NCBI RefSeq assembly: GCF_006345805.1
Contig: NC_043012.1
Coordinates: 31,248,001-31,312,000, forward strand
From: Octopus sinensis
Lineage: Eukaryota
DNA length: 64,000 nucleotides
Direction: 5' to 3'
Shown here: positions 12,640 to 51,529 of the stretch, piece after piece
Numbering within the stretch: the stretch's first letter is position 1
Layout: the number at the start of each line of letters is the position of its first letter
Notes under the pieces: model-generated
The model's database searches: none
The model's input: only the letters and a program-made list of their open reading frames with translations
What the model was told of the DNA's origin: nothing
Position numbers and translations under genes: made by a program

Positions 12640-12791
12640 TTGTGAGAGGAGAAAGGAATGCGTGAGAAGAAAAGAGAAAGTGATAGGAGAAAAAGATAGA
12701 GAGAGGGAGAATATAGAAAAATCATTAGATGTGAATCAAGTGAACAAAATCACACACTTCTTTGATGAATGTGTAAAATATAACGTAATAT

Positions 12792-13082
12792 AAGGCGGCG
12801 AGCTGACAGAGTCATTAGTACGCCGGACAAAATGTTTTGCAGCATTTCGTCCGTCGTTATCTTCTGTTTTCAAATTCCGGCGAGGTCGACTTTGCCTTTT
12901 ATCCTGGCAGAGTCGTCAGCACGCCCGGCAAAATGCTTAGCGGCATGTCGTCCGACTTTACATTCTGAGTTCAAATTCTGTCGAGGTTGACTTGCCTTTC
13001 AACCTTTCGAGGTCGATAAGATTGAGCACTGAGGTCAATTTAATAGGACTTAATCCCTTCCCTTGTGTCAAAATTTGAAATC
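12792..13082 (+). mobile_element. Degenerate SINE family A dimer (old tail)
   Basis: Two head/core segments gaggtcgactttgcc; ends ..tgtgtcaaaatttgaaatc. Confidence 0.8.
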
Positions 13083-14409
13083 TATGTACTGTAATATATA
13101 CTTAAAATACGAAAAAAAAAGAAACAATGTGTCATCGCTTCAAAATGCTTTGAAATTTCACTGAAAATCTTTTAATGAATTTTACTTAATTTCATCCAAA
13201 TGCTTTCTATATATTTACTCTCCTCTCTTTTTCTTCTAAAATCCTTTGTCTTCTTACCCCTTTTTTCCTTCTTTCATCGTCTCTCTTTCATCGTATCTGA
13301 TTGTAAAGCTAACGTCACCTTTATTTCCTGCAGCTTTTCTCTTGTTCAAGACAAGTTTTCTAATGAAGATCTACAGGAACCATTGCATGTTAAGCAGCCA
13401 TTTCTTACCCGTTGTAAATTCTATGAAATGGACGCGAAAGCGTAAATAAGACACTCCTTCTTCGGCCATATTCACTTGTATAACTGAATGAACAAAGCTT
13501 TCATATACACTTTAGTAATTGTTGTAAGTGATTTACTGAATGAAACACCGAGGAATTAGTATTCGTATGTGCATGCAATTATCGCCACTGCTAACTTCTC
13601 AAACGTATAACCACATATTTGTAACTACACAGAATTACTGTCTGGAATAACAATTTCGACTCTCCTGGATTACCATCTTGGATTTCATCGGATCCATTTT
13701 AATCCATCTGCATACAGACTATCTTTTGCTCGTTCAGCGAAGCACATACACAAAAAATAGTAATACATAAATAGACTCATACGCACCATGCAACACGTAC
13801 ACACGCACAGGCCTTGTCCTCTTCTATTGTCCCTCTTTTTCACACCTTCTTTCTCTCACATATGCACACATATACACTTATACACAATCATTGGCGCTCA
13901 CAGACACACACACACTCTCTCTCTCTTTCTTTCTTTCTCACTCTTGTATATTCCGAGAGACTTACAGACGGGAATATAAATGGCAGACTTAAACATAAAA
14001 TCCCCGGCAGACTTAAACATAAAAACGATAATAGAACATTTATAGAAGACATTTTAGATTAAGAATGATTTAAGCAAATACAAAGCCAGATCAAAGTGCT
14101 ATCAAATATATTTCCTAAGAACGTGTCATACCTGGAGCAGGCTATGAACCCAAGACCTACGAACCAATATTATTGCACATATTCACTTCGATTATTATCC
14201 CTTCTGAACTTTACACAAAATAATTCTTTTCTTGCTTTGGTATGAACGTTATTGCTGTTTTGCTATGCGACGTAAATTAACACTGTATTTAATATTTATT
14301 TAATATTTTAGAAAGACCGACGTATCTTCGGAAATGACGTAAGTCGAAACGACTTAACCAGAGATATATGTGTATATTAATATTTAATTAACATATACGT
14401 CGTTTTCTA

Positions 14410-14625
14410 AGGCTGCGAGCTGGCAGAATCGTTAGTGTACCGGGCAAAATACCGTTAGGTATTTTGTCCGTCTTTACGCTCCGAGTTCGTATTTCACCGA
14501 GGTCGACTTTGCCTTTTATTCTTCGGGGTCGATAAAATAAGTTCCAGTTGAGGACTGGAGTCAATGTAAATAACTTAACCCCTCCTCCAAAATTGCTGGC
14601 CTTGTGCCAGAATTTGAAATCAATA
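14410..14625 (+). mobile_element. SINE family A (old tail)
   Basis: aggctgcgagctggcagaatcgttag..gaggtcgactttgcc..aaattgctggccttgtgccagaatttgaaatc. Confidence 0.85.
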
Positions 14626-22489: not shown

Positions 22490-23140
22490 CATTCAAATAT
22501 TGGTCTCAAATTTTGGTACAAGGCTAGCTATTTTTCAGGAGAGGTTAAATCATTTATATTGACCGCAGTACTTAAGTGGTGCTTTATTTTATCGACCTCG
22601 AAGGGATGAAAGGCAAAGTCAACGTCGGCGAAATTTGAACTTAGAACGTAATCTGACGGAAGAAATACCTATTTCTTTACTACCCACAAGGGACTAAACA
22701 CAGAAAGGATAAACAAGGACAGACAAACGGATTAAGCCGATTATATCGACCCCAGTGCGTAACTGGTACTTAATTTATCAACCCCGAAAGGATGAATGTC
22801 AAAGTCGACCTCGGCGGAAGTTGAACTCAGAACGTAACGGCAGACGAAATACCACTAAGCATTTTGTCCGATGTGCTAACGTTTCTGCCCGCTCACCACT
22901 TTCACTTTACAGTCTATTATTGGGACGAAAAAAGATATTGATTTAAAATTTTGGCACAAGGTCAGGAAGTTGGGGGCAGCAATTTACATCGATCCCAGCG
23001 CTCAACTCTTTTTATCGAACTCGAAATGATGACAGGCAAAGTCGACCTCGGCAGAATTTGATCTCAGATCAAAAGGACGGACGAAATACCTCTAAGCATT
23101 TTGCCGGGTTGCTATCAATTCTGCCCTTTCGCCGCCTTTA
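22490..23140 (-). mobile_element. Cluster of three SINE family A units (old, young, old)
   Basis: Young tail joined at 22669 to an old-type headless unit; the third unit (22942-23140) lies between 22-bp direct repeats. Confidence 0.85.
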
Positions 23141-24900: not shown

Positions 24901-25340
24901 GATAGGTAGATAGACAAATAAAATACTCAAGTAAAATTTACGAGCAAGCAAATAATTTCAAGTTAAACAAATAAAACTGAATGAAAAAAATGTAGAACAC
25001 TGAAAAGAAATGAAAACAATAAACGAAAGAGTGTAATGGAAATTTTAAAAAGCCAAAATGAGAGAATTAGATGAAAATGTAACTGTGAAAGTACAACTAA
25101 CTGTTGTCTTTCCCAAAATACTTCTTGAAAGGATGAACTAGAGTAAAGCGTTGGTGTATCACTTACTGATGTTATTGAAAAAAACATACAAGGCCCGATA
25201 CGTGCAACGTAACTAATCGTTAAAAAATAAGAACAAATGTGATCCCTCTTCATTGAACAAAAAAAAAAGTACCTATCAGCTGAAGGATCAAAGAATACAG
25301 AAATTTGCAATAAAATGGAATATAGACGAAAACATATACC

Positions 25341-25759
25341 TATTTCTTTACTACTCACAAGGGGCTAAACACAGAGAGGACAAACAAGGCCAGAAAAACG
25401 GATTAAGTCGATTATATCGACCGCAGTGCGTAACTGGTACTTATTTTAATCGACCCCGAAAGGATGGAAGGCAAAGTCAACCTCGGCGGAATTTGAACTC
25501 TGAACGTAGCGGCAGACGAAATACCTGTTTCTTTACTACCCACAAGGGGCTAAACACAGAGAGGACAAACAAGGACAGACAAACGGACTAAGTCGATTAT
25601 ATCGACTCCAGGGCGTAACTGGTACTTATTTTAATCGACCCCGAAAGGATGAAAGGCAAAGTCGACCCCGGCGGAATTTGAACTCAGAACGTAACGGCAG
25701 ACGAAATACCGCTAAGCATTTCGCCTGGTGTGCTAACGTTTCTGCCAGCTCGCTGCCTT
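25341..25759 (-). mobile_element. SINE family A head-to-tail dimer within one TSD pair
   Basis: 21-bp TSD atatagacgaaaacatatacc at 25320-25340 and 25760-25780; internal junction at 25525/25526. Confidence 0.9.
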
Positions 25760-26342
25760 ATATAGACGAAAACATATACCGAGCATCTCAGGAATTTACA
25801 ATATGAATGCAATTGAAAAGGTCGGGATACATTCTAAAAAATGAAATCTTCCCCTCAATTTTACACAGAACACAAATTCGCCAAAAATTTGTGAAAGTTA
25901 AAAAAAACCCCCAAAAGACAAAAAATAAAATAAAAAGAAAAAGAAAAGAGTTATGAGGAGTTACAAGGGGCGCTTAAACCAGAATTCCGCCAATTAAATC
26001 AGCTCCCCGTAAAACCATAATATTATGCAAATTGTTATTTTCAGCGTTTTGATACCATCATTTGGTGGCTTCTAAAAAATCCATTAAATATGTATATATC
26101 TTTTTTTGTAGAAAAATAAGTGTATACGGCCTCTGAACAAGTTGCAATTCCTGGCAAGAATCAGGTTAGGTCGTTCACTCCTTTTCTTTCATCATGAAAA
26201 ATGTGTAAAATTGACACTTGTTTATCAATGGAATCAATGGATTCGTTTACACATTTATGCAGATTCGATAAAATCTTGTATCTTTTCAGTAAGTACATAC
26301 ACACATACATATAGGTGATATTATGTATATATATATATATAT

Positions 26343-29300
26343 ATATTATATAAAAATAGTATTAGAGAAAAACCACTATTTTGCAAACAAAACAAGGAAA
26401 GACTTAATCAATACATAAAATTTAAATAAATAGTCCAAAAAACCGCCACTACAATCTTTCTTGTCTTGATCGACAATCTTCAGTGGACTTCCAATCTAAA
26501 AATCAATATTTTAAAATATAAAAATAATATTTAAAATAATTAAAGTATGAATGAAAAAATATAAGTATATAATCCATATATAACCTAAATAATCCATATA
26601 TAATCAATATATAAACAATATATAAACTAAAAAAACCTATCAACAATAAATATAAACTATAACATATAAAATATAAAATATAAAATATAAAATATAAAAC
26701 AAAAAAAAAAAAATATAATAAGATAATAATAAACTATATACACCCATACACAGATACCTAATTATATATAACCATATCTAACTACATACACTAAATCACA
26801 CACCTATATATATATCCCTATACATACACATAAAAACGTCTAGGCAACTATAAAAAATAAAATAGCTAAATACTTCAACACAATACTTATTCATACTCCC
26901 ACACACACACATACAACCCACATTCACGCTCTAGAAAACGGACATCACTCAAAACTATGACGGAGAAAATGGATAAATGGAATTAAAAATATATTCAATT
27001 GGTAAAAAACGAACACTACTTAAAAATTATGAATGAAACAATGCAATAAAACAACAGACATCGCAAATAGACACAAATTACTACGAATTCCTTAACAAAC
27101 TATCATGATAAACCAAAAACCTCATAAAAACATATAATGATAAAATCTCCATTTACTAAACTCTATATACAAACCTATATAGCAATCCCCCTAACCTAAA
27201 CATTCACACACAAATACACCACGTAAACCACACACCCACGACATATACAAATACCCACACCACTTACACATACAATACATACATATAAACCTCAACATAT
27301 ACTCCAAAACCCACTCAACCCCACACAGACAAATAAACACAAAAATTATGAATGGATTCTTTATAAAACTACCATGATAAGCTAAAACTCACAAAACAGA
27401 AATGATAAAACCTCCCTTTACTAAACAACACTATAACATACTTATATAGCAATCCCTTTAACCTATAATTCACACACAAACACACACGTAAACAACACAC
27501 CCCATAACAAATACAAACACCCACCCCACTCACACACACCAACAAGTACATATAAGCCTCAACATATACACCAAACAAAATTACTTACCAAGGAACTTAA
27601 CATATGTATAAAAAGTATAACCGCCTGGGTAACGAACATCTCTAATTAATGAATGAGAAATGAATAAATGGAATTAAAAATAATATTCACGTGGCAAAAC
27701 GAACACCACTCAAAAATTATGAATGAAACAATGTAATAAAACAACCGACATCGAAAATAGACAAATTACCACGAATTCCCTAAAAAAAACCATGATAAAC
27801 CCAAACTCTTAAAAACATATAACGATAAAATCTCCCTTTGCTAAACTCTATAACAAACCTATATAATAATCCCCTAACCTAAACATTCCACACACTCAAA
27901 TACACACACTAACCCACAGACCCACGACTTATACACATACCTATACTAACTTATAAACCTCAATATACACCAAAACCCACTCACTCCCACACAGACAAAT
28001 TAACACATACATCCCAAAACCTAAATAACAAACCCATATACACATTCACACACAAACACACACACACGCAAAACCCACACACACAACGGATACATATCTC
28101 CCTCACATATACGCATATACATACTCACTAACTCGATATATACAACAATATTTACACACCCACCCATACATAAAATAAATTATACAACTAAAAACTCACA
28201 CACCAAACTCATATACATAAACACTCCTATGAAAACAACATTAAATACATCGTAATAACCAGAATATCAAAAATAACAAATGACATAAGGATAAATAAAA
28301 GACATACTTACAAGTCAGTTTCAAATATGAATGAAATTAAATTCTTATCTTAGCCGTTAAAAAAATCAAACCAAAATTACGTTACCATAGAAATAACTTA
28401 TGTAAAAAAAGAATACGCGCCATGGAAAGTAAACGTCATTTAAATTATGAATGGAGAAATAGAATAAATGGAACTAAAAACTATATCCACGTGGCAAACC
28501 AACACTACTTAAAAAATTTATTATGAATGGATTCTTTAAAAAACTACCATGAAAAATCATTATATACATTTATGAGCTTTAGCTCACCTTAGCAGCTCTA
28601 ACAAACAACTTGCAGTAACCCAAACCCATTCTCTATGCTACCTCACTACTACACTATTCCATTCACAATTCCAAGCACGCTAGTCCACCACCCGGTTATT
28701 CACGTGGCAAAACGAACACCACTCAAAAATTAAGAATGAAACAATGTAATAAAACAACCAACATCGAAAATAGACAAATTACCACGAATTCCCTAAAAAA
28801 AACCATGATAAACCAAAACTCATAAAACATATAACGATAAAATCTCCCTTTGCTAAACTCTATAACAAACCTATAAAGCAATCCCCCTAACCTAAACATT
28901 CACACCAAATACCACACGTAAACCACAGACCCACGACTTATACACATACCTATACTAACTTATAAACCTCAACATACACCAAAACCCACTCCCTCCCCAC
29001 ACAGACAAATTAACACATACATCCCAAAACCTAAATAACAAACCCATATACACATCACACACAAACACACACAACACGCAAAACACACACACACAACGAT
29101 ACAAATACTCCCTCACATATACGCATATACATACTCACTAACTCGATATATACAACAATAATTACACAACCCACACTCATACAGATAATAAATTATACAA
29201 CTAAAAACTCACACACATCTCATATACATAAACACTCCTATGAAAACACATTAAATACATCGTAATTAACCAAATATCAAAAATAATAATATGATATAAG

Positions 29301-29828
29301 GATAAATAAAATACATACTTACAAGTTAGTTTCAAAATTATGAAGTGAAATTAAATTCTTAGCCGTTAAAAAAACAAACAACCAAAATTACGTTACCATA
29401 GAAATAACTTATGTAAAAAAAGAGAATACGCGCCATAGAAAGTAAACGTCATTTAATTATGAATGGAGAAATAGAATAAATGGAACTAAAAACTATATCC
29501 ACTTAGCAAACCAACACTACTTAAAAAATTTATTATGAATGGATTCTGAAAAAAACTACCATGAAAAATCATTATATACAATTATGAGCTTTAGCTCACC
29601 TTAGCAGCTCTAACAAACAACTTGCAGTACCCAAAACTATTCTCGATGCCTACCTCACTACCACAATAATCCATTCACAATTCCAAGCAACGCTAGTCCA
29701 CCACCCGGTTACAATTCCCAACTCCACCCATTCATTCACAATTTCAACGACATTCGCCTCCACAGCGCTACATATAAGCCTCAACATATACACCGGAGAT
29801 ACACTTACACATCCGTGCGGATGGGTGA
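26343..29828 (-). repeat. Left arm: inverted copy of the element 3' region
   Basis: Ends cacatccgtgcggatgggtga, the reverse complement of tcacccatccgcacggatgtg at 32951; starts atattat..attagagaaaaaccactattttgc, matching the right end at 37921-37960. Confidence 0.95.
26447..26488 (-). ncRNA. Hammerhead ribozyme, left-arm copy (two single-C differences)
   Basis: Reverse complement: cca-CTGAAGA-ttgtc-gatcaa-gacaa-GAAA-gatt-GTA-gtgg. Confidence 0.65.
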
Positions 29829-31852
29829 TGATATTCTTTATAATATTAATAAGGCCTCTAAAGTAGTAATGTTAAAATATGAGTTGGATAATAAAACTGA
29901 ACCTTATGTACCTTTGCACCCCAGAATTACTCTTAAAGACCATAAAGATAATTTTTATTCAGACCCTAAAGTTAGATTAATTTGCCCATGTAAATCGGAC
30001 CTAGGTAAATTAAGTAAATTTATTTTAGATAAATATATTGATAAGTTAAATAAACTTAATTATTTAAAATTATGGTTTAGTAATAATAATACATTGAAAT
30101 GTTTAATATATTAAAGATAAAATCGTTATAAATTTATTCAAATAGATATGATAATTATTATTCTTCTATTAATGAAATTGTGTTTAATAAAGCGCTTATT
30201 TTCGCAATGAATAAAGTGGGTATGTCACGGGAAGAGTTAATGTAATTAAAATGGCTAGGAGATCGCTAATTAAATATAAAAAAATTATGGGCTAGGAATG
30301 ATACTAGAGATTGTTTTGATATACCTATGGGAGCACCAGATTCTGCACAGGCTACTGATTTAGTAGGTATTTTTCTTTTATCTGAACTCCAATTAGAAAA
30401 TCTTAAGATAGAGGGTGGTTTATATAGAGACGATCTTCTACTAGTTACAAAGAATTGTACTAATAGGAATCTAGAAGTATATAAGAAAAAACTATATAGT
30501 TTCTTTAAAAGATATGGTTTAAGTATTACTATATATAAGGAGAATTATAATGTTAATTATTTAGATGTTAATTTTAATCTTATTACAGGTAAAACACAAC
30601 CATATCATAAACTTAATGAGAACCTTAGATATATAAATGTTAATAGTAATCACCCATTTTCTATTAAAAAATCGTTGATTAATAATATAAGTAAACGTTT
30701 TCATTACTCTCTTATGATATAGAGATTTTTAATAAACATGCTAATTATTATAATGAGGCCCTTAGAGGGGCAGGTTATAATAGGAATATTAAATTTTATA
30801 ATATTAGTGATAAAGATTTAATTGTTAATTTTCGAGATACTTCTAATAATAATTATATTTTGTTAGGTTAGTGGTAAAAATAATAGATATTATAAAAAAA
30901 ATAATAAAAATGATAAAAATATAAAAGAATAATAATAATAATAATAAATATAATAATATAATATAAATAAGAATAATATAAATAAAAATAAATTTAATAA
31001 TTATTAAATAATTATATTGATAAATTTAATAATATTAATAATTCCTTAAATGCTGTACATAGATATAATTCTGATAATAATTTTAATAAAATAAAGAATT
31101 ATAATATATTTATAATAATGATAATAATAATAAGGTTAATAAGAATAAAATTTGGTTAATAGTTCCTTATGGAGATCAAGTAAAAACGAATATTATTAAA
31201 GAGATTTTAGATGTTATAGAACTATTTATTAGAGATAATCGTAAATATAGAAACATTTTCTCTTTTAATAATTTTGGAGTTGGTTACTCTACCACTAATA
31301 ATGTTGGTAACATTATTTCTTCGTTTAATAAATATAACTGAATAATTTTTATAAAAAGAAATTATTTGATAATAATATTAATAATGATAAGACTTATATT
31401 AATGTACATGTAGAGATAAATCTAATTGTATATTAAATAATAATTGTGATATTAACGATGTAGTGTATAAATGTATAGTTACATTACATGATAATAACTT
31501 TAGAATAATAATTACACAAAAGCGGTTTATATAGGTTCTACTTCCTCAAAAATAAAACTAAGAATCGCACAACATATGAATTCTTTTAAAAATAAAAACT
31601 TAATCAACTCAACCGGACTTAGTAAGTACATTTGGAGTCTTAAATCACTAAATATTAATTATAGTTTACTTTGGGAATAATTTGTAAAACTAAATCATAT
31701 ACTATAGGAGCTAATTGTTGTTATTTATGCTCTAATGAGTTTAAAGAAATTTTATTTTATAAGTATGATAATTTACTTAATACTGGTGAAGAGCGCAAAA
31801 TAAAATGCAGACATAAGTTACTTTACCTATATAATAAGTTTCATGATAAATA
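29821..31852 (+). pseudogene. PLE reverse transcriptase + GIY-YIG endonuclease ORF (5'-truncated, frameshifted in this sequence)
   Basis: ITLKDHKDNF..PKVRLICPCKSDLGKLSK, IQID, PMGAPDS, GLYRDDLL, YLDVNFNL, SNHPFSI, VPYGDQVKTNI, CTCRDKSNC..VVYK..VYIGST..RIAQH..SKYIWSLK..CYLC..LLN..CRHK. This motif set matches what I know of Naiad PLEs. Confidence 0.92.
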
Positions 31853-32950
31853 GCAATAATAGTTCCCTTTTAGGTTACTTTAGTTTAGTTTAAATTAGTT
31901 TAGATAATATATTTTTGGTTATGTTGTCTAGGCTTTAATTATAGTTAGTCTTTATTGATATTTCTTTGTTTTAATTAGTTCATTTTTAATGTATATTAAT
32001 TTTTTTTATTTTATTTTATTTTATTTTATTATGTATTTTTATTATGCATTTGTTATATGTATTTTGGAGGATATATTTATATGTTTTGGGTGTTATTTAG
32101 TGGTGTTTTTATTGAGATTTGTATGTATGTGTGAATGTTTAAGATCCCTTTGTTTTTTGTTTTTTATTTGGTATGTTGAATTGACAGATTTTATTTGGGT
32201 ATTGTCTGTTATAATAAAGTACACACACCCATAACAAATATAAGTGCCCACTTCATTCGTTGTACCTGGAATTGCATGTGAGCCTCAGCATATACACCTA
32301 ACGGCCACTCCCGCCCCACATGGATAAATAAACACATACATCCCCAAAAATGGACTTAATCCCATTCACACCAATTATATGTATACAATTATACACACTA
32401 GAATAATACATAACTAACCCAAATATACAGAACATACTAAAAATCACCAACTAACCACCATCACAAATGAAACCCACACCCATACAATGAAAACACTCCC
32501 CCCTCCATACCCAATTTACACCCACATAGTAATCCCAATATATTCATCCATACATGGACGCAAGTGCGTGAAGCACATGCACATAATTAATACGTACAAC
32601 CCCCTAATACACACTTATATACATACGTATCAAGCTCGACATCCACTGCGATACGCTTACACCCACTCACACCCAGATGGGTGAATTGCACAACCAGGGA
32701 ACGCACACACACACGTGTGCGTTTTTTGATTGTGCAATTCGCCCATATGCATGTATGCGGGCGCGATTACATTGTTGCATATATCGAGCCCAAATAGCAT
32801 GCATATGTACATGTGAGGGGGTACACGCAAATGACGTGCGCGTGTACCCCCTGCATTTATACCCGTGCGTGAATATACACATGGAGACTACCACACAGGT
32901 ACAAATGTGTATAGTAATGGGAGCCCCATCACTACACTCAATGTATACTC

Positions 32951-35900
32951 TCACCCATCCGCACGGATGTGTAAGTGTATCTCCGGTGTATATGTTGAGG
33001 CTTATATGTAGCGCTGTGGAGGCGAATGTCGTTGAAATTGTGAATGAATGGGTGGAGTTGGGAATCGTAACCGGGTGGTGGACTAGCGTTGCTTGGAATT
33101 GTGAATGGATTAGTGTGGTAGTGAGGTAGGCATCGAGAATAGTTTTGGGTACTGCAAGTTGTTTGTTAGAGCTGCTAAGGTGAGCTAAAGCTCATAATTG
33201 TATATAATGATTTTTCATGGTAGTTTTTTTAAGAATCCATTCATAATAAATTTTTTTAAGTAGTGTTGGTTTGCTAAGTGGATATATTTTTTAGTTCCAT
33301 TTATTCTATTTCTCCATTCATAATTTAAATGACGTTTACTTTCTATGGCGCGTATTCTCTTTTTTTTACATAAGTTATTTCTATGGTAACGTAATTTTGG
33401 TTTGGTTTTTTTAACGGCTAAGAATTTAATTTCACTTCATAATTTTGAAACTAACTTGTAAGTATGTATTTTATTTATCCTTATATCATATTATTATTTT
33501 TGATATTCTGGTTAATTACGATGTATTTAATGTTGTTTTCATAGGAGTGTTTATGTATATGAGATTGTGTGTGAGTTTTTAGTTGTATAATTTATTTATC
33601 TGTATGAGTGTGGGTGTGTAATTATTGTTGTATATATCGAGTTTAGTGAGTATGTATATGCGTATATGTGAGGGAGTATTTGTATCTGTTGTGTGTGTGT
33701 GTTTTGCGTGTGTGTGTGTTTGTGTGTGAATGTGTATATGGTTTGTTATTTAGGTTTTGGGATGTATGTGTTAATTGTCTGTGTGGGGAGGAGTGGGTTT
33801 TGGTGTATAATGAGGTTTATAAGTTAGTATAGGTATGTGTATAAGTCGTGGGTCTGTGGTTTACGTGTGTGTATTGTGTGTGAATGTTAGATTAGGGGGA
33901 TTGCTATATAGGTTTGTTATAGAGTTTAGCAAAGGGAGATTTTATCGTTATATGTTTTTATGAGTTTTGGTTTATCATGGTTTTTTTAGGGAATTTGTGG
34001 TAATTTGTCTATTTTCGATGTTGGTTGTTTTATTACATTGTTTCATTCATAATTTTTGAGTGGTGTTCGTTTTGCCACGTGAATAACCGGGTGGTGGACT
34101 AGCGTTGCTTGGAATTGTGAATGGAATAGTGTAGTAGTGAGGTAGGCATAGAGAATGGGTTTGGGTTACTGCAAGTTGTTTGTTAGAGCTGCTACGGTGA
34201 GCTAAAGCTCATAAATGTATATAATGATTTTTCATGGTAGTTTTTTAAAGAATCCATTCATAATAAATTAATTTTTTTAAGTAGTGTTGATTTGCCACGT
34301 GGATATAGTTTTTAGTTCCATTAATTCTATTTCTCCATTCATAATTTAAATGACGTTTACTTTCCATGGCGCGTATTCTTTTTTTACATAAGTTATTTCT
34401 ATGGTAACGTAATTTTGGTTTGATTTTTTTAACGGCTAAGAATTTAATTTCACTTCATAATTTGAAACTGACTTGTAAGTATGTCTTTTATTTATCCTTA
34501 TGTCATATTGTTATTTTTGATATTCTGGTTAATTACGATGTATTTAATGTTGTTTTCATAGGAGTGTTTATGTATATGAGTTTGTGTGTGAGTTTTTAGT
34601 TGTATAATTTATTTATCTGTATGAGTGTGGGTGTGTATTTATTGTTGTATATATTGAGTTTAGTGAGTATGTATATGCGTATATGTGAGGGAGTATATGT
34701 ATCCGTTGTGTGTGTGTGTTTTGCGTGTGTGTGTGTTTGTGTGTGAATGTGTATATGGGTTTGTTATTTAGGTTTTGGGATGTATGTGTTAATTTGTCTG
34801 TGTGGGGAGTGAGTGGGTTTTGGTGTATATTGAGGTTTATAAGTTAGTATAGGTATGTGTATAAGTCGTGGGTCTGTGGTTTACGTGTGTGTATTTGTGT
34901 GTGAATGTTTAGGTTAGGGGATTATTATATAGGTTTGTTATAGAGTTTAGCAAAGGGAGATTTTATCGTTATATGTTTTTAAGAGTTTTGGTTTATCATG
35001 GTTTTTTTAGGGAATTCGTGGTAATTTGTCTATTTTCGATGTTGGTTGTTTTATTACATTGTTTCATTCATAATTTTTGAGTGGTGTTCGTTTTGCCACG
35101 TGAATATTATTTTTAATTCCATTTATTCCATTTCTCCATTCATTAATTTAGAGATGTTCGTTTCCAGAGCGGTTATACTTTTTATACATATGTTAAGTTC
35201 CCGTGTGTGTGTGTTTGTGTGTGAATGTGTATATGGGTTTGTTATTTAGGTTTTGGGATGTATGTGTTAATTTGTCTGTGTGGGGAGGGAGTGGGTTTTG
35301 GTGTATGTTGAGGTTTATAAGTTAGTATAGGTATGTGTATAAGTCGTGGGTCTGTGGTTTACGTGTGTGTATTTGTGTGTGAATGTTTAGGTTAGGGGGA
35401 TTGCTTTATAGGTTTGTTATAGAGTTTAGCAAAGGGAGATTTTATCGTTATATGTTTTTATGAGTTTTGGTTTATCATGGTTTTTTTAGGGAATTCGTGG
35501 TAATTTGTCTATTTTCGATGTTGGTTGTTTTATTACATTGTTTCGTTCTTAATTTTTGAGTGGTGTTCGTTTTGCCACGTGAATAACCGGGTGGTGGACT
35601 AGCCTTGCTTGGAATTGTGAATGGAATAGTGTAGTAGTGAGGTAGGCATAGAGAATGGGTTTGGGTTACTACAAGTTGTTTGTTAGAGCTGCTAAGGTGA
35701 GCTAAAGCTCATAAATGTATATAATGATTTTTCATGGTAGTTTTTTAAAGAATCCATTCATAATAAATTTTTTTAAGTAGTGTTGGTTTGCCACGTGGAT
35801 ATAGTTTTTAGTTCCATTTATTCTATTTCTCCATTCATAATTTAAATGACGTTTACTTTCCATGGCGCGTATTCTTTTTTTACATAAGTTATTTCTATGG

Positions 35901-37960
35901 TAACGTAATTTTGGTTTGATTTTTTTAACGGCTAAGAATTTAATTTCATTTCATAATTTGTAACTGACTTGTAAGTATGTCTTTTATTTATCCTTATGTC
36001 ATATTGTTATTTTTGATATTCTGGTTAATTACGATGTATTTAATGTTGTTTTCATAGGAGTGTTTATGTATATGAGTTTGTGTGTGAGTTTTTAGTTGTA
36101 TAATTTATTTATCTGTATGAGTGTGGGTGTGTAAATATTGTTGTATATATCGAGTTTAGTGAGTATGTATATGCGTATATGTGAGGGAGTATATGTATCC
36201 GTTGTGTGTGTGTGTGTTTTGCGTGTGTGTGTGTTTGTGTGTGAATGTGTATATGGGTTTGTTATTTAGGTTTTGGGATGTATGTGTTAATTTGTCTGTG
36301 TGGGGAGTGAGTGGGTTTTGGTGTATATTGAGGTTTATAAGTTAGTATAGGTATGTGTATAAGTCGTGGGTCTGTGGTTTACGTGTGTGTATTTGTGTGT
36401 GAATGTTTAGGTTAGGGGATTATTATATAGGTTTGTTATAGAGTTTAGCAAAGGGAGATTTTATCGTTATATGTTTTTAAGAGTTTTGGTTTATCATGGT
36501 TTTTTTTAGGGAATTCGTGGTAATTTGTCTATTTTCGATGTCGGTTGTTTTATTACATTGTTTCATTCATAATTTTTGAGTGGTGTTCGTTTTGCCACGT
36601 GAATATTATTTTTAATTCCATTTATTCCATTTCTCCATTCATTAATTTAGAGATGTTCGTTACCAGAGCGGTTATACTTTTTATACATATGTTAAGTTCC
36701 TTGGTAAGTAATTTTGTTTGGTGTATATGTTGAGGCTTATATGTACTTGTGGTGTGTGTGAGTGGGGTGGGTGTTTGTATTTGTTATGGGGTGTGGTTTA
36801 CGTGTGTGTTTTGTGTGTGAATGTATAGGTTAAAGGATTGCTATATAAGTATGTTATAGTGTTTAGTAAAGGGAGGTTTTATCATTTCTGTTTTGTGAGT
36901 TTTAGCTTATCATGGTAGTTTTATAAAAAATCCATTCATAATTTTTGTGTTTATTTGTCTGTGTGGGGTTGAGTGGGTTTTTGGAGTATATGTTGAGGTT
37001 TATATGTATGTATTGGTATGTGTAAGTGGTGTGGGTATTTGTATATGTCGTGGGTGTGTGGTTTACGTGTGTGTATTTGTGTGTGAATGTTTAGGTTAGG
37101 GGGATTGCTATATAGGTTTGTTATAGAGTTTAGTAAATGGAGATTTTATCATTATATGTTTTTATGAGTTTTTGGTTTATCATGATAGGTTTGTTAAGGA
37201 ATTCGTAGTAATTTGTGTCTATTTGCGATGTCTGTTGTTTTATTGCATTGTTTCATTCATAATTTTTAAGTAGTGTTCGTTTTTACCAAGTGAATATAAT
37301 TTTTAATTCCATTTATTCCATTTCTCCGTTCATAGTTTTGAGTGATGTCCGTTTTCTAGAGCGTGAATGTGGGTTGTATGTGTGTGTGTGTGGGAGTATG
37401 AATAAGTATTGTGTTGAAGTATTTAGCTATTTTATTTATTTATAGTTGCCTAGACGTTTTTATGTGTATGTATAGGGATATATATATAGGTGTGTGATTT
37501 AGTGTATGTAGTTAGATATGGTTATATATAATTAGGTATATGTGTATGGGTGTATATATAGTTTATTATTATATTATTATTATTATTTTTTTGTTTTGTT
37601 TTATATTTTATATTTTATATTTTATATTTTATATTTTATAGTTTATATTTAATTGTTGATAGGTTTTTTTAGTTTATATATTGTTTATATATTGATTATA
37701 TATGGATTATATATAGGTTATATATGGATTATATACTTATATTTTTTCATTCATACTTTAATTATTTTAAAATTATTATTTTTATATTTTAAAATATTGA
37801 TTTTTTAGATTGGAGTCCACCTGAAGATTGTCGATCAAGACAAGAAACGATTGTAGTGGCGGTTTTTTTGACTATTTATTAAAATTTTATGTATTGATTA
37901 AGTCTTTCCTTGTTTGTTTTGCAAAATAGTGGTTTTGTCTCTAATAATATTTTATAATAT
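32951..37960 (+). repeat. Right arm: long G/T-rich 3' region with ~1.02-kb tandem units
   Basis: Marker gtggtgttcgttttgccacgtgaata at ~34060, 35080, 35560 and 36580. Confidence 0.9.
37817..37859 (+). ncRNA. Minimal type-I hammerhead ribozyme
   Basis: ccac-CTGAAGA-TTGTC-gatcaa-GACAA-GAAAC-gatt-GTA-gtgg: full conserved core, 5-bp stem II, 4-bp stem I, GUA triplet. Confidence 0.85.
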
Positions 37961-38066
37961 TACTATTAAATTGGATTTAATCCTAAATCTGATTTTTTCC
38001 CTGTAAATTTGGATTTATTCCCTAATATTTATTATATATATATATATATATCATCTATGTATGAGC

Positions 38067-38115
<49 letters not shown>

Positions 38116-38124
38116 TATATATAT

Positions 38125-38290
38125 AGGGAGAGTTTACGAAAAAAAAACAAAAGACGAAGACAGATGATGTACAAAACAAACAGATGTATTAGTATAACGA
38201 TCAAGAATAGAAAAAGTATTTTGCGTTTCGAGCCTACGCTCTTCTACAGAAAGGGACACAGAAAAAAATAAGGAGAGAAAAAATGTGTGT
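38125..38290 (-). mobile_element. Family H3 repeat end with hammerhead-like core
   Basis: Minus strand 38216-38254: ccttt-CTGTAGA-A-GAGC-gtag-GCTC-GAAAC-gca-aaat; next to (TA)n. Confidence 0.55.
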
Positions 38291-38977: not shown

Positions 38978-39133
38978 CAGTGAATAGATATAATTCCTTC
39001 TCTTCAAGTATATTTCTTACAGAATAATAAACATCGAATATATTCATCTCAACCGGGGGTGGGATGACTGTATTCGATGTTTATTATTCTGTAAGAAATA
39101 TACTTGAAGAGAAGGAATTATATCTATTCACTG
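38978..39133. repeat. Perfect 63-bp inverted repeat (foldback hairpin)
   Basis: 38978-39040 is the exact reverse complement of 39071-39133; the 30-nt centre is also partly self-complementary. Confidence 0.95.
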
Positions 39134-39174: not shown

Positions 39175-39395
39175 AAAACAGCGAGCTAGCAGAACATGAG
39201 CACGCTGGGTAAAAATGCTTAGCGGCATTGCGTCCATCTTAACGTTCCGAGTCCAAATTCCGCTGAGGTCGACTTTGCCTTTCATAATTTCGGAGTCGGT
39301 AAAATAAGTACCAGTTGAGCAATGGTGTCGATGTAATCGACCAACACCCCATCCCCGAAATAGCTGGCCTTTTGTCCAAACCTGAAAGCTATATT
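39175..39395 (+). mobile_element. SINE family A (old tail)
   Basis: gcgagctagcagaa..gctgaggtcgactttgcctttc..tagctggccttttgtccaaac. Confidence 0.8.
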
Positions 39396-43585: not shown

Positions 43586-45893
43586 TGAGCGATGCGAATT
43601 GTGGAAAGGCTTCAGTTGAGTTGAATATGCAACTTAGTTTCAATATAATTTCATATCAATATCACTGCCTCGGGCACCAAGACGTCGCAACTGTCCAACA
43701 AAATCATCCGGTCTATAATTCCAAATCCACGTCTGATTAAGGATATTGCGCGTGAATTTATTGTTTCAATATTAATTTTGGAATTCAGCTTTGACTGCAA
43801 TAATTTTCTGACTCTCCTTGTGTACTCTCTACTGGTCATTTGTTTCATTTCTTCATTTTGTTTATCTCATTTGCTTCCAGGATCCCCAAGTACTGTCCTT
43901 ATACTACTGTCCTTTCTCAACCGCTTTCATTCTTTGTCCATTTAACATTTCAATTCCCTGGCTTCTTTCAAATCTTCCTCGTTCCATTTTCAATATAGCG
44001 CACTTTTCTACTCCAAATTCCATAACTGTGTCATTTGAGAAAATGCGGATAGTATGTACAAGGCTTTCAAGCTGTTTCTCATTTTTCGCATAAACCTTTA
44101 TATCAACCATGAAAAGGAGATGATTTTACCTGATCTTTTCCTTTTCCCAAATCGTAAGCAATTTTAACATTTCATAGTGAGCGGTTTCATGGCCAATACA
44201 AATAGTAATAGAGTTAAGCTATCACGTTGGAATATTCCACGTCTGATATTCACTTTTTCTCCAATCAATTCAGTATTCCAATGATTCATACTTCCATTAA
44301 GCATTTTCTTCACGTTTCTTTGCTATTCCATACATGCTCATTGTTTTACTTATCCAACTGTGCGGTACCATGTCGTATGCTTTTTTGTAATCTAGCCATG
44401 CTACATTCAGTCCTGTCAATCTGCGTCTACAATTTCTAATTATCAGTTTATCAACTAATAAGGGATTTTTTGTTGCCCTGCTATGTTTTCTGCGTCCTTT
44501 CTGTTCCTGTGGAAGCAGATTATTTCTTTCCAGATGGTTGTATAACTCTTCCGCCTTGACACCGGTCGTAAGCTTCGACATTAGTGGTAAACAGATTATA
44601 CGTCGAAAATTTGATGTCAAGTTGAAGCATAGCAGTATTCGTCCACTTGTCATCCAAGTAGGAACGTGACCTTGCTGCAGGCAGTCATCCAGTTGCGCAG
44701 CGATCTTTTCATGCAACTGTGTAAAGTACTTCAGCCGATAGGCTTGTATTCCATCAGGGCCTGGTCCTTTTCAATTCGCTATTTTTTAAACTTCTGTCTC
44801 ACTGTATATAGATTAATTCTAACGCCCTTTTGTCTTGGTACAGTTTCAAGTTGTCTTTCCACCTTTGTTAACCACATCGCGCTTTCTTTAATGTCACGCA
44901 GGCCTGTTCTTTACTTTCTTCCCATTCTGGTAGCAGTTCCTGGTGTTGTCCTCCTTCTCTTTCTTCAAATAGGCGCCTTCTATTTGATTGGAATAGTCAG
45001 TTCTGTTCTAAAACTTTGCATCTAGCATCATGTCGTTTCAATTTGGCCTTTAATGCTGTCACCTTTTGTGTTAATTCTTCACGTGCTGTTTGTTTTCGCC
45101 TTTCAATTTTCTGATTACTGCCTTATTCTTAAGCTCTCCTCTCACTATCCTATTCAGTTGCCCCAGTTCTTTCCGCGCCTTTTCCAGCTTCATTCGTATT
45201 CTCTTCCTCCAGTTTAGTTCTCTCTTTTCACTTGCTTTTATATCTTCAGTTTTTCGCTTGTAGCCTACTATGTTAGCAACGACATTAGCCGCAGCTATGA
45301 TTAGCTAGCTTGTTTCACTGATGTTATCTACTTTAGTGAAGCTTAAAACGTCCTTTACTTTGCCTGTGGCTTTCCTCACTTGTTTTCTATCCATATATCT
45401 TACATTTGGTGGTACTTCATTGTTCCCATTAGTCATTTTGCCTCGCAACATTTCTAAAATCTCCTTCTCTATATCATTCAAGTCTTGTGCAGTACTTACT
45501 GTCACTTGTCTACTTAGATCGTCTTCATTGGTTACTTTATCAGTATTCTCTGGTACTCTGCGGTTTCCATCTCTTTCATGTTCCTCATCTCTTACCCCTT
45601 CCTTACCGCCTTCTGCTATTTCTGTTTCACTCTCATTCTGCTCTTTTTTTTATATGTTTCTCTGAATGTCTTCAATCTCTACAGTCGTAATCCAGTCGTT
45701 CCTACGGATTGCTCTTTCTTCGTCCATCAGTCGCTAGGCTGATGTTTCAAAACCTCCTTTTTCATCCCATATTCTCTTCATTCAATTCACGAAGCCTCTT
45801 TTATTTGGCTCACTTCTCAGCCAGAATTCGATTACTATTTTGTTTACTTCTTTTCCCCCATTTTATTATTTTTCTTTTGCACTTTTGACTGCG

Positions 45894-47283: not shown

Positions 47284-48252
47284 AATATTATCGTTTGGAG
47301 TTCATAAAATATTAAAATACTGAAGTCAGTGTAATCGATTGTTCTATCCTCTAAAACACGTGACATGCCAAAGTAAGAAATAATTATTGTAAAAACCAAT
47401 GTCCGTAGAACGCTGGTTACAAGTAACTCTGTTCACTTTGTACGGAAGAGCAATATCTATTATTGACTCCGATATTGGGGAAAGTGCTCATCGTTTGATG
47501 TCCCGAATAAATTTATCTTGCGTTGTTCTAAGTGCTTTTGTTTTATTTATTAAGAAATATACATGATCTAAATATAAAATGGGTTGCAACGGCATGTAAT
47601 GTACTTTAATTTATGTACTTTAATTTATGTAATGTATTTAATTTATGTCATGCCTGAACGTTTATATAATTTATTCTAAGACATTTATATAACCTGTTCT
47701 CAGACATTGGTTATTCAAAGGGAACTTAGTAAAGTCCTTACTGTCACGTTATTAGGGATATTAACTGAAGAGTCATTATTTTTTGAATCACTATTATTAC
47801 TGCTATTTGACGAGAACACAACTGGAGTAGTATCATCTTTACTAGATTGCGATATATTGGTTAATTGCGGTTATTTTATCGGTTAGATTTGGCGTGGTGG
47901 AATATGAAAATTTTATTAAATGTCTATTAAAGATTTTACTATATCTATTAATGGGGAAAAAGTGCTTCTCCATTGCTTTAAAATGTTACTCTATAGATCG
48001 GATAAAAATTTGTCTATGGATCAGAATGTTAATTTTTATAAAACTTGACATATATTCCAACATTAAAATTAAGAGGCTAATTTACAGAGCATAGAACTAG
48101 AATATTATAGAAATAAAGTAATTTAAATGTGCAACGATGAAAAAATAAACTATTCTTTATCTTCCATGGTATTTCAAACCACGTACTAACTTTTCGAAAA
48201 TATAACTTTCTATGTGAAATTTTAATTTCAACTGCTTTCCTAATATATACTG

Positions 48253-50064: not shown

Positions 50065-50500
50065 CAGCTAGTTTTATGGACGTGGTAAGTCGATTACATC
50101 AACCCCAGTGCGTAACTGGTACCTATTTTACCGACCCCCAAAAGGATGAAAAGCAAAGTTGATTTTGGCGGTATTTGAACCCAGAAGGTGAAGACAGGTG
50201 AAATGCTGTTAAGCGTTTTGCCCGACGCACTAACGATTCTGCCAGCTCGCTGACTTATAACTTACTTATATTAAAATATATTTCTTTACTATCCACAAGG
50301 GGCTAAACACAGAGAGGACAGACAAACGGATTAAGTCGATTATATCGACCCCAGTGCGTAACTGGTACTTAATTTATCGACCCCGAAAGGATGAAAGGCA
50401 AAGTCGACCTCGGCGGAATTTGAACTCAGAATGTAACGGCAGACGAAATATGGCTACGCATTTCGCCCGGCGTGCTAACGTGCCTGTCAGCTCGCTGACT
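50065..50500 (-). mobile_element. Two tandem SINE family A copies (old then young)
   Basis: A 36-bp direct repeat, 50243-50278 = 50488-50523, bounds the young copy. Confidence 0.9.
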
Positions 50501-51529
50501 TATAACTTACTTATATTAAAATAACTCACCTAAAATCCATATTGATCACCTTCGAAAAATCGTGTTCCTTTATCTGTTCTTTTTCTGTTGCTAATCTTAA
50601 TTATATGAATTTACAATAAAAAAAAAAGTATAGCTGCATGTAACCGTGTTCCAATTATTCTGGTCTTAGTTTTTGTTCAGAATATGGAGAAAATATTAAG
50701 GATGAAGTCCATTCTATTAAGCTTAACAATATTGATGTTTTGCAGCTATTCATGTTGATATAATCTGTGCGCGGCAGATTGAATGCCTACTAATTAGATT
50801 TCAAAACTACAGAGACGGATCTGCTTCATATTAAAAGGAAAAAAGAAGTTTTTGCCGAAACATATGACTTCAGGTATTGTTTTAAAAATTTCCACTAACG
50901 AAGAACAAAAAACTGAATCTTGCGGTTTAGCAGGGAGGGGGGGTAGAGATAGATAGATAAAGAAGGAGAGAGGGAGAGAGAAAGAAAAAGAGAGAAGAGT
51001 GAAAGGGAGGGAACGAGAGAAAAAGAGGCAGAAAGAGAGACAGAGAAGGATGGATAGATAGATAGATAGAGAGAGAAAGAAAGAAAGAGAAAGAGAGAAA
51101 AAGAGAGAAATATGGGGCGAATGCATGGAAAAAGCCAAGTGTTGCTGGATTAGGTCGCAAATAACGACATCCGCTGCTTTCCAGAACTGTACGCCATTTC
51201 TTTTTACTCTTTTCTTTTTTTTTTTAATCGGGCTTTTATCAACTAAATACATTAAAAGTAACCTACAGCTTTTTTCTCATTTTGAGTTACTTTGAAATGA
51301 AGTCCCCAAGTTTTGAAAACTTTCAGCTACTTTTTATGAAATTTATATGGTAACCATAGGAAAGTCATGATTAAAATGGTGTTTAGTATTTCTAATATCG
51401 CAGACACAGGTACCGTACCGCGAAAACAAAAATCTTAAAAATTCAATACAAGATTGTCTTAAATATTAAAGTAAGCGTTAATGTATTAAATGTGGTAAGC
51501 ACGGCCAGTTTAATGAGACGTTGAGGTTG

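What the first reader, a model, noticed from the sequence alone, without database searches (positions are those of the whole stretch)
26343..37960. 11.6-kb foldback Naiad-type Penelope-like element with multi-kb inverted arms
A 3.5-kb left arm and a 5-kb right arm are reverse complements and enclose a 3.1-kb loop holding RT + GIY-YIG. Inverted pLTR copies at 5' truncations are known for PLEs, but typically on a scale of hundreds of bp. Here the post-ORF region is ~6 kb, longer than the retained ORF, and most of it is mirrored. The locus could form a multi-kb dsRNA or DNA hairpin (siRNA or ADAR substrate). I know of no description of such a family in cephalopods, but I cannot search.
Basis: partly seen in the sequence, partly recalled or inferred. 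Interest (0 to 1): 0.85.

Follow-up and report, generated by a model that had tools for sequence, protein, structure and literature searches.

The report
Dead octopus Penelope-like retrotransposon, head-to-head pair
This is a decayed insertion of a Penelope-like retrotransposon in an octopus-type genome, laid down as two truncated copies facing each other, which is how these elements normally insert; only its long repeat-filled tail is unusual, and it belongs to the "Hydra" clade, not "Naiad".

Summary
The inverted repeat is real. The left arm (26343-29829) and right arm (32951-37960) enclose a 3.1-kb loop with a decayed, 5'-truncated RT plus C-terminal GIY-YIG ORF.

The structure is the standard insertion pattern of Penelope-like elements (PLEs). 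Two 5'-truncated copies lie head-to-head with their 3' ends outward. Each 3' end abuts (AT)n, and a conserved ~70-nt tail sits on one side only. A minimal hammerhead-like motif lies ~100-140 nt from each 3' end. A miniature version of the same layout (130-bp arms) occurs at an unrelated Octopus vulgaris locus.

"Naiad-type" is wrong. The domain order is RT then EN. The CxCX5C linker and the CxxC/CxH pair around the catalytic E and N match the Hydra clade of Craig et al. 2021, and the closest full-length relatives also carry DKT and RW(R/K).

The arms are multi-kb because the element has a ~6.2-kb 3' region built around a ~1,017-bp tandem repeat. Units pair by position across the arms (98.2-98.8% against 93.9% within the left arm), so the array pre-dated arm formation. 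The right arm later gained ~1.5 kb.

I could not establish whether the long tail is family-wide. The one other same-family ORF copy found lacks it.

Verdict: ordinary biology, modest interest.

The parts
26322..26346 (.). (AT)n microsatellite at the left outer end (target sequence)
   Evidence: Sequence read; the repeat finder D1.
26343..29829 (-). Left copy: inverted, 5'-truncated, tail-only copy of the element's 3' region. Its 3' end is at 26343 and its 5' truncation point at 29829.
   Evidence: blastn; C/A-rich on the + strand; sharp inner junction.
26446..26487 (-). Mirror copy of the hammerhead-like motif, damaged by a 1-nt deletion in GAAAC
   Evidence: Motif scan; it fails the full descriptor.
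27684..29711 (-). Two ~1014-bp tandem units of the left arm (27684-28697 outer, 28698-29711 inner)
   Evidence: Outer unit is 98.2% to right unit 3, inner unit is 98.8% to right unit 1, and the two left units are only 93.9% to each other.
29830..31853 (+). Decayed, 5'-truncated PLE ORF. RT motifs 29830-30870 (KDHK..RLICP, YDNYYSSI, MGAPDSAQ, YRDD); N-rich low-complexity linker ~30875-31150; pre-EN linker 31105-31338; CxCX5C at 31403-31429; GIY-YIG EN ~31440-31850 (VVY..VYIGST..R..H..CYLC..E..N..CRH); stop at 31851-31853.
   Evidence: tblastn shows colinearity with full-length relatives from about aa 145-160 to the EN. 93.2% ungapped identity to the intact 566-aa O. vulgaris ORF, with 11 frame-breaking indels. 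RT fold confirmed on that intact relative. Pfam GIY-YIG E=5.7e-4, below the family cut-off.
31854..32950 (+). Proximal, unmirrored part of the 3' region; heterogeneous. G/T-rich 31900-32200; C/A-rich 32200-32650, containing a ~80% inverted fragment of the tandem unit; 47% GC with small palindromes 32650-32950.
   Evidence: It contains no second 3' terminus or hammerhead core.
32951..37960 (+). Right arm: the mirrored part of the 3' region of the ORF-bearing copy. Units at 33068-34084, 34085-35105, partial 35106-35584, 35585-36605; older degenerate partial unit at 36946-37363; unique terminal ~600 bp.
   Evidence: G/T-rich with ~6% C on the sense strand.
37817..37859 (+). Minimal type-I hammerhead-like motif: CCAC-CUGAAGA-[UUGUC gaucaa GACAA]-GAAAC-gauu-GUA|GUGG
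   Evidence: All invariant core positions are present, helix II is 5 bp, helix III 2 bp, helix I 4 bp. It is the only descriptor hit in the 64-kb window, and 2000 simulated 12.2-kb sequences gave none. The architecture matches published PLE hammerheads (PMC4209133). Rfam does not call it and the monomer fold is not more stable than shuffles.
37961..38030 (+). One-sided 3' 'tail' extension, present on the right copy only
   Evidence: The same ~65-70-nt sequence, again on one side only and followed by (AT)n, occurs in O. vulgaris locus L003 at ~7900-7975.
38025..38125 (.). (AT)n microsatellite at the right outer end (target sequence)
   Evidence: TRF; sequence.

Best explanation
This is one old, dead insertion of a Hydra-clade Penelope-like retrotransposon (RT followed by a C-terminal GIY-YIG endonuclease) in an octopod genome.

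Inferred mechanism: the endonuclease cut a (TA)n microsatellite. Reverse transcription was primed from the 3' end of element RNA on both DNA strands. The two cDNAs stopped at different points and were joined head-to-head. That left an 8.2-kb copy (29830 to ~38030, reaching back into the RT) and an inverted 3.5-kb copy (26343-29829, 3' region only). The 3' ends face outward against (AT)n, and a ~70-nt terminal extension sits on one side only.

The arms are multi-kb because the template RNA had an unusually long (~6.2 kb) G/T-rich 3' region. That region contains at least two already-diverged ~1-kb tandem units and a minimal hammerhead motif near the 3' end.

After insertion, the right arm gained ~1.5 kb by internal duplication, the ORF picked up 11 frameshifts, and the arms drifted 1-3% apart.

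The locus has no coding function now. If transcribed through, it would fold into a long near-perfect RNA hairpin.

Shown here: the anatomy, the clade motifs, the (AT)n flanks, the one-sided tail, the hammerhead-like motif and the unit orthology. Inferred: the single dual-priming event, any ribozyme activity, and any dsRNA consequence.
For: The arms and their sharp inner junction have no microsatellite between them.

Both outer ends lie on (AT)n.

The ORF is colinear with full-length relatives, with RT before EN. The intact same-family ORF in O. vulgaris shows CxCX5C, Y..YxG, R, H, CxxC-E, N and CxH as invariant columns. DKT and RW(R/K) are present in every relative that has an N-terminus. These are the Hydra features listed in PMC8557442, section 11, which also reports (TA)n targeting.

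The predicted structure has an RT fold; the top PDB matches are all RTs at probability 1.00.

The hammerhead-like motif sits ~100-140 nt from the 3' end in the sense orientation, with 0 hits in 2000 simulations. PLE hammerheads on opposite strands are described in PMC4209133.

A miniature of the same layout exists in O. vulgaris (L003 7640-7990): 130-bp inverted arms, the same one-sided tail, then (AT)n.

Units pair positionally across the arms, so the array was already in the template.

No second 3' terminus or hammerhead lies between the ORF and the right arm. The ORF-bearing copy therefore needs the terminus at ~38030 as its 3' end.

Indel density per lineage is about equal in the ORF (~6.5/kb) and the arms (~6.7/kb).

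PMC8557442, section 6, describes exactly this inverted 5'-truncated-copy architecture and the one-sided tail.
Against: The only other same-family ORF copy I could retrieve (L003 26723-28378, 89.6% by blastn) loses similarity within ~50-65 bp after the stop codon and has no arm-like sequence within 15 kb downstream. ORF-to-tail continuity is therefore seen only in this window.

The proximal tail (31.9-32.95 kb) is compositionally heterogeneous and flips polarity, which could indicate a composite origin.

Hydra elements are described as generally under 3 kb (PMC8557442), far shorter than the ~9 kb implied here.

Rfam does not recognise the hammerhead, it has U-A instead of the usual G-C at the first helix II pair, and no cleavage was tested.

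GIY-YIG support from Pfam is below threshold and the EN fold search was not significant.

No RT phylogeny with labelled clade references could be built. The clade call rests on published diagnostic motifs.
Confidence: 0.72

Rival explanations
1. Composite locus. The arms belong to a separate, non-autonomous hammerhead-bearing element (mobilised by PLE machinery) that formed its own inverted pair. The RT-EN fragment is a different insertion or rearrangement product that happens to sit at its centre, so the '6-kb 3' UTR' is not part of the autonomous element.
For: The same-family ORF copy in O. vulgaris lacks the tail. The 31.9-32.95 kb segment is heterogeneous and contains an inverted unit fragment. 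Tail-only inverted pairs exist on their own elsewhere (L003 7640-7990). Non-autonomous PLE partners are documented in other animals (bioRxiv 10.64898/2026.07.22.740005).
Against: A retrotransposed 5'-truncated ORF copy must carry its own 3' terminus. No terminus, hammerhead or (TA)n lies between the stop codon and the right arm. The ORF's truncated 5' end abuts the left arm's inner end directly. Similar indel load in the ORF and the arms suggests the same age. The sense strand is C-poor through both ORF and tail.
Confidence: 0.17
2. Post-insertional DNA-level inverted duplication (fold-back replication or template switching) of the 3' region of an ordinary single PLE copy, unrelated to the integration mechanism.
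For: The arms are highly similar (98-99% in orthologous units). The left copy's truncation point lies at a small palindrome, CATCCGcaCGGATG, which could promote a strand switch.
Against: The left arm ends at essentially the element's 3' terminus and abuts (AT)n like the right arm, as expected for a second priming event rather than a random duplication breakpoint. The same inverted-pair-plus-one-sided-tail layout recurs at independent loci and is described as a general PLE property (PMC8557442).
Confidence: 0.07
3. Assembly artefact: a chimeric or palindromic long read, or mis-joined repeats.
For: PLE tandem/inverted structures are known to trouble assemblies (PMC8557442). In O. bimaculoides the tail of a related copy runs into an N gap.
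Against: The arms differ by 71 substitutions, 43 small indels and a 1.5-kb length difference. The loop is 3.1 kb of unique sequence, the outer flanks are different unique sequences, and the one-sided tail matches an independent locus. Mirror-read artefacts give identical arms with no loop.
Confidence: 0.03
4. Naiad-type PLE.
For: (TA)n targeting is shared with Naiads. Rfam finds no canonical hammerhead, and Naiads lack canonical HHRs.
Against: The EN is C-terminal to the RT in this copy and in all nearest full-length relatives. Relatives have DKT rather than the Naiad DKA, and there is no CC pair in the GIY-YIG core. A hammerhead-like core is present.
Confidence: 0.01

Closest known systems
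Hydra clade of C-terminal EN+ Penelope-like elements (Craig, Yushenova, Rodriguez & Arkhipova 2021, PMC8557442)
   Same: RT followed by a C-terminal GIY-YIG EN. CxCX5C linker motif. CxxC and CxH on either side of the catalytic E and N. No CC pair in the GIY-YIG core. DKT and RW(K/R) in the nearest full-length relatives. Insertion into (TA)n. A hammerhead motif in the terminal repeat. Molluscan hosts are reported.
   Different: Described Hydra families are generally under 3 kb with canonical hammerheads. This copy implies an element of ~9 kb, with a 6.2-kb G/T-rich 3' region containing ~1-kb tandem repeats, and a hammerhead too minimal for Rfam to call.
Generic PLE insertion architecture (pLTRs, inverted 5'-truncated partner copy, one-sided 30-40-bp tail; Evgen'ev & Arkhipova 2005 and Arkhipova 2006, as summarised in PMC8557442)
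   Same: Head-to-head 5'-truncated copies with 3' ends outward, a microsatellite target and a tail at one end only.
   Different: Scale: arms of 3.5 and 5 kb, against 130-390 bp in the other octopus examples I retrieved. The tail is ~70 nt rather than 30-40. No direct (tandem) pLTR upstream of the ORF, because the ORF copy is itself 5'-truncated.
Naiad PLEs (N-terminal EN+)
   Same: (TA)n preference, complex inverted insertions, and presence as old remnants in cephalopods.
   Different: Naiads have EN before RT, a CxC linker, DKA, usually an IFD, and CCHH in the EN. Where these could be checked, none applies here.
Non-LTR retrozymes (tandem type-I hammerhead repeats mobilised by PLEs; PMC7229834, bioRxiv 10.64898/2026.07.22.740005)
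   Same: Tandem repeats associated with PLE sequences and a type-I hammerhead.
   Different: Retrozyme units each carry a hammerhead. Here the ~1-kb units carry none, and the single motif lies in the non-repeated terminal 150 nt.
Inverted-repeat dsRNA loci edited by ADAR in octopus (PMC5625713)
   Same: Neighbouring inverted copies of one repeat that could form long, near-perfect dsRNA.
   Different: No expression or editing data were examined. The mismatches between the arms show no A/G excess.

Membership tests
Penelope-like elements (EN+) | Reverse transcriptase domain | tested here: met
   RT motifs A/B/C are visible in the window pieces. The 131-aa piece has 2018 relatives. The predicted structure of the intact same-family ORF matches only RTs at the top of the PDB search (probability 1.00). 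Pfam RVT_1 does not detect it.
Penelope-like elements (EN+) | GIY-YIG endonuclease fused to the RT | tested here: inconclusive
   Pfam GIY-YIG hits are below the family cut-off but recur at the same C-terminal position (window piece E=5.7e-4; relatives 9e-4 to 0.012). Y..YxG, R, H, E and N are invariant. The model has beta-beta-alpha-alpha-beta-alpha order. The fold search was not significant; the best relevant hit was T4 EndoII at E=1.7.
Penelope-like elements (EN+) | Inverted and/or tandem 5'-truncated copies with a one-sided tail | tested here: met
Penelope-like elements (EN+) | Hammerhead ribozyme motif in the terminal repeat | tested here: inconclusive
   A complete core with three helices lies at 37817-37859 and is unique against simulations. 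Rfam is negative, helix III is only 2 bp, the monomer fold is no better than shuffles, and cleavage was not tested.
Hydra clade | C-terminal EN (RT before EN) | tested here: met
Hydra clade | Linker Zn-finger-like motif CxCX5C | tested here: met
   CTCRDKSNC at 31403-31429. The three cysteines are invariant in alignment A1.
Hydra clade | CCHH motif absent from the EN core; CxxC and CxH flank the catalytic E and N | tested here: met
   VVYKCIVTL...VYIGST has no CC pair. CYLC-SNE...LLN...CRH is present. C523, C526, E529, N543, C552 and H554 are invariant.
Hydra clade | DKG changed to DKT; RWK motif near the N-terminus | not testable with these tools
   The window copy and the O. vulgaris copy are 5'-truncated past these motifs. 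All four nearest relatives that have N-termini show DKT and RW(R/K/P).
Hydra clade | Insertion into (TA)n | tested here: met
Hydra clade | RT groups with Hydra reference families in a phylogeny | not tested
   No labelled Repbase references were available, and the paper's supplements are not held.
Hydra clade | Short element (generally under 3 kb) | tested here: not met
   The retained copy alone is 8.2 kb. This is a descriptive tendency in the paper, not a defining character. Complete relatives P0005 and P0019 do sit on ~2.6-kb contigs.
Naiad clade | N-terminal GIY-YIG EN joined to the RT by a CxC motif | tested here: not met
   The EN lies downstream of the RT in the window, in the same-family ORF and in all nearest full-length relatives.
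Naiad clade | DKA variant of the DKG motif; CCHH retained in the EN | tested here: not met
   Relatives have DKT, and there is no CC pair in the GIY-YIG core.
Non-LTR retrozyme | Type-I hammerhead in every tandem unit | tested here: not met
   No hammerhead core in any ~1-kb unit; the only motif is in the non-repeated terminus.

The most novel reading that the evidence does not exclude
An octopod lineage of Hydra-clade PLEs has evolved a 3' region of 6 kb or more, made of kb-scale tandem repeats. Because PLE integration routinely makes head-to-head pairs, this lineage would seed the genome with multi-kb perfect-hairpin loci that contribute disproportionately to the exceptionally high dsRNA and hyper-editing load reported for octopus.
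Probability: 0.1. Interest if true: 0.5.

Novelty: new member of a known kind. Interest (0 to 1): 0.22.

Why it matters
Mainly as an annotation lesson. A striking 11.6-kb foldback turns out to be the normal footprint of Penelope-like element integration, scaled up by a long tail.

It adds a curated example of a Hydra-clade PLE in octopods. This lineage is so divergent that Pfam misses its RT, and its remnants are annotated as 'GATA zinc finger domain-containing protein 14-like' and 'uncharacterized protein DDB_G0282133' in Octopus RefSeq.

If the long repeat-filled tail proves to be a family trait, these loci would be candidate sources of long dsRNA in a genome known for heavy A-to-I editing. 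That idea is already generic for inverted repeats and was not tested here.

Tried and rejected
1. Rfam scans (E<=1 over 16.5 kb, E<=10 over 161 nt) found no hammerhead family. The motif was found only by a hand-written descriptor.

2. Pfam on the ORF pieces gave nothing except a sub-threshold GIY-YIG hit. A PDB sequence search with the family profile found nothing.

3. An exact look-up of the window's 131-aa ORF found no record, so the source assembly was not identified.

4. I searched for other copies of the tail through the translation of a spurious 150-aa ORF spanning the loop/arm boundary. No candidates.

5. The EN-half search with the intact O. vulgaris ORF returned only a 37% relative.

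6. Metagenome scan with a motif conserved in all tandem units: no hits. Scan with the tail motif: 69 hits, all 27-nt chance matches inside a gene of AT-rich marine bacteria. Rejected.

7. I first read the O. bimaculoides copies as having short (~0.8 kb) tails. I withdrew this: copy A runs into an N gap, and copy B's G/T-rich repetitive tail is cut by the locus end.

8. ADAR-type signature: arm-to-arm mismatches show no A/G excess (21 transitions, 50 transversions).

9. Homopolymer-error explanation for the many 1-nt indels: not supported.

10. The fold search of the EN domain alone was not significant.


Full report
OBSERVATION

The inverted repeat is real and far beyond chance. The repeat finder and self-blastn show that 26343-29078 is the reverse complement of 37960-35202 (96.4% over 2784 columns; 97.4% ungapped). 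They also show 27364-29828 against 35488-32951 at 92.7%. The inner ends are sharp...GGATGGGTGA|TGATATTC at 29829/29830, mirrored at 32951. No other copy of the arms exists in the window. The loop (29830-32950) is 3.12 kb.

ARM ANATOMY

The arms are not simple. Each contains a ~1017-bp tandem repeat, with two units on the left and about 3.5 on the right.

Pairwise unit comparison shows positional orthology across the arms. The inner-left unit is 98.8% identical to the inner-right unit. The outer-left unit is 98.2% identical to the outer-right unit. The two left units are only 93.9% alike.

So an array of at least two already-diverged units existed before the arms were made. The 92.7% figure comes from an out-of-register alignment. 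The extra ~1.5 kb in the right arm is a later internal duplication (right unit 2 against unit 3, 98.9%).

The sense strand of the 3' region is strongly G/T-rich and has ~6% C.

THE LOOP

Three-frame translation gives at least 8 stop-free pieces on the + strand. In order they carry:
- KDHK..RLICP, YDNYYSSI, MGAPDSAQ and YRDD (RT motifs);
- an N-rich low-complexity stretch;
- LIVPYGDQVKTNI;
- CTCRDKSNC;
- VVYKC...VYIGST..R..H;
- CYLCSNE...LLN...CRH, then a stop at 31851.

tblastn with full-length relatives confirms colinearity from about residue 145-160 through the EN. The ORF is therefore 5'-truncated and reads RT then EN.

The 131-aa RT piece has 2018 relatives in the 1.84-billion-protein library. 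The closest are Octopus bimaculoides XP_052826861, O. sinensis XP_029653623 and an Argonauta hians protein, so the window is octopod.

A same-family copy in O. vulgaris (L003 26670-28367) keeps an intact 566-aa ORF. Against it, the window copy is 93.2% identical (ungapped) and has 11 frame-breaking indels. These indels are not concentrated in homopolymers.

The predicted structure of that intact ORF (pLDDT 73.7) matches only reverse transcriptases at the top of a PDB fold search.

The GIY-YIG assignment rests on four things:
- repeated sub-threshold Pfam hits at the C-terminus;
- invariant Y..YxG, R, H, E and N;
- the secondary-structure order of a confident domain model;
- a weak, non-significant match to T4 EndoII.

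CLADE

Craig et al. 2021 (PMC8557442) define Naiads by an N-terminal EN joined to the RT through a CxC motif, with DKA, usually an IFD, CCHH retained and no canonical hammerhead.

They define Hydra as C-terminal EN+, with these features:
- DKT instead of DKG, and an RWK motif;
- no CCHH;
- a CxCX5C linker;
- CxxC and CxH around the catalytic E and N;
- insertion into (TA)n;
- hosts that include Mollusca.

The window copy, the intact O. vulgaris ORF and five full-length relatives show the CxCX5C, CxxC-E, N and CxH positions as invariant columns. DKT and RW(R/K) are present in every relative that has an N-terminus. The element is therefore Hydra-clade by published diagnostic motifs, not Naiad. 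I could not run a labelled phylogeny because no reference set was available.

TERMINI

Both outer ends are 3' ends and both lie on (AT)n.

The right copy continues ~70 nt beyond the point where homology with the left copy stops (37961 to ~38030) before the microsatellite begins.

At an unrelated O. vulgaris locus (L003 ~7640-7990) there are two ~130-bp inverted copies of a related terminus. There the same ~65-70-nt extension is again on one side only and is again followed by (AT)n. Two further small (AT)n-flanked inverted pairs turned up in the O. bimaculoides and O. sinensis loci (240- and 386-bp arms).

This is the architecture described for PLEs in general: an inverted 5'-truncated copy next to the main copy, and a tail at one end (PMC8557442, section 6).

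HAMMERHEAD

A hand-written descriptor finds one hit in the whole window, at 37817-37859 on the sense strand. It reads CCAC-CUGAAGA-UUGUC/gaucaa/GACAA-GAAAC-gauu-GUA|GUGG. It has every invariant core nucleotide, a 5-bp helix II, a 2-bp helix III with a 4-nt loop, and a 4-bp helix I.

None of 2000 simulated 12.2-kb sequences gave a hit. The mirror copy in the left arm has lost one base of GAAAC.

This matches the metazoan PLE hammerheads of Cervera & de la Pena 2014 (PMC4209133): helix III of 1-2 bp with a 2-4-nt loop, a short helix I, probable dimeric action, and frequent occurrence as nearby pairs on opposite strands.

Rfam does not call it and the monomer fold is no more stable than shuffles. 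Activity is unproven.

MECHANISM (INFERRED)

EN cleavage occurred in a (TA)n tract. Reverse transcription was primed at the RNA 3' end on both strands. Both cDNAs were truncated at the 5' side and joined head-to-head.

The lack of any microsatellite at the inner junction argues for one concerted event rather than two independent hits. The left copy's truncation point lies at a small palindrome (CATCCGcaCGGATG), which could have been a pause or switch site.

Indel density per lineage is similar in the ORF (~6.5/kb) and the arms (~6.7/kb). This is consistent with both having decayed since the same event.

WHAT REMAINS OPEN

Is the 6.2-kb tail a property of the family? In favour:
- the tandem array pre-dated arm formation;
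- there is no alternative 3' terminus between the ORF and the right arm;
- tails of related octopus copies are also long and G/T- or T-rich.

Against:
- the only other same-family ORF copy loses similarity ~50-65 bp after its stop codon, and a different repeat follows;
- the proximal tail (31.9-32.95 kb) is heterogeneous and includes an inverted unit fragment.

Every route to more copies failed.

An assembly artefact is unlikely. The arms differ by 71 substitutions, 43 small indels and 1.5 kb, and they enclose a unique loop.

NOVELTY

PLEs are a recognised and abundant repeat class in octopus (PMC13282606, PMC8967140). Hydra families in molluscs and the inverted-pair architecture are published (PMC8557442). 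Inverted repeats as dsRNA and ADAR substrates in octopus are published (PMC5625713).

What is unusual is the size: an implied ~9-kb element in a clade described as under 3 kb, with kb-scale tandem repeats in its 3' region. I rate this a new member of a known kind, with low-to-modest interest.

Noticed in passing
window 31854-38030 (mirrored in 26343-29829); also L002 11900-14600 and L001 20205-21083: Extreme strand asymmetry of the PLE 3' region. The sense strand is ~70% G+T with only ~6% C. Tails of related O. sinensis and O. bimaculoides copies are also T/G-rich. The cause is unknown (intrinsic sequence, or directional mutation or editing).
   Followed up: partly
window 32200-32650: Inside the 'unique' loop there is a C/A-rich stretch containing a ~80%-identical inverted fragment of the tandem unit (32283-32348 against 34835-34773 and others). 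This suggests an older round of inversion within the tail.
   Followed up: partly
window 32956-32969 (mirror 29811-29824), and 32670-32860: The left copy's 5' truncation point coincides with a small palindrome, CATCCGcaCGGATG. Several other short GC-rich palindromes cluster just upstream.
   Followed up: no
window 47854-47982 (- strand): A 43-aa remnant of the pre-EN linker of another Hydra-clade PLE (tblastn E=4e-6 to P0005), with nothing else of that copy left.
   Followed up: partly
window 44297-44716 (- strand): A 139-aa ORF with a sub-threshold Pfam RVT_1 match (E=1.1e-4). It looks like a fragment of a different retroelement RT, possibly a LINE.
   Followed up: partly
window 25336-25763, with copies at 995-1236, 5089-5335, 22659-22894, 50281-50504, 39179-39341, 14408-14577 and 12904-13017: A dispersed ~240-bp repeat, locally duplicated in tandem (185-bp period) just left of the element. 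It is SINE-like in abundance, but ARAGORN finds no tRNA-like head.
   Followed up: no
window 38979-39132 (- strand): A long near-perfect hairpin that scores 76 bits against Rfam MIR2606 (gathering score 139.7). It is more likely a MITE-like palindrome than a microRNA.
   Followed up: no
L003 26670-28367 (O. vulgaris OX597818.1): An intact 566-aa 5'-truncated RT-EN ORF of the same family. Part of it is built into a chimeric 23-kb gene model annotated as 'hypothetical predicted protein' (P0164).
   Followed up: yes
L001 ~11920-12650 (O. bimaculoides CM046609.1): An N gap starts ~160 bp downstream of a related PLE ORF. The assembly failed exactly where the repetitive tail would be.
   Followed up: no
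L001 3606-4305; L002 15345-16566; L003 7640-7990: Small (AT)n-flanked inverted pairs with 130-390-bp arms. One has a CUGAUGA...GAAA core at L001 4101-4125. They are probably heavily truncated PLE head-to-head insertions.
   Followed up: partly
Proteins P0001 and P0002 (XP_052826861.1, XP_029653623.1): RefSeq names for these PLE remnants ('putative uncharacterized protein DDB_G0282133', 'GATA zinc finger domain-containing protein 14-like') appear to come from their N-rich low-complexity linker and are misleading.
   Followed up: no
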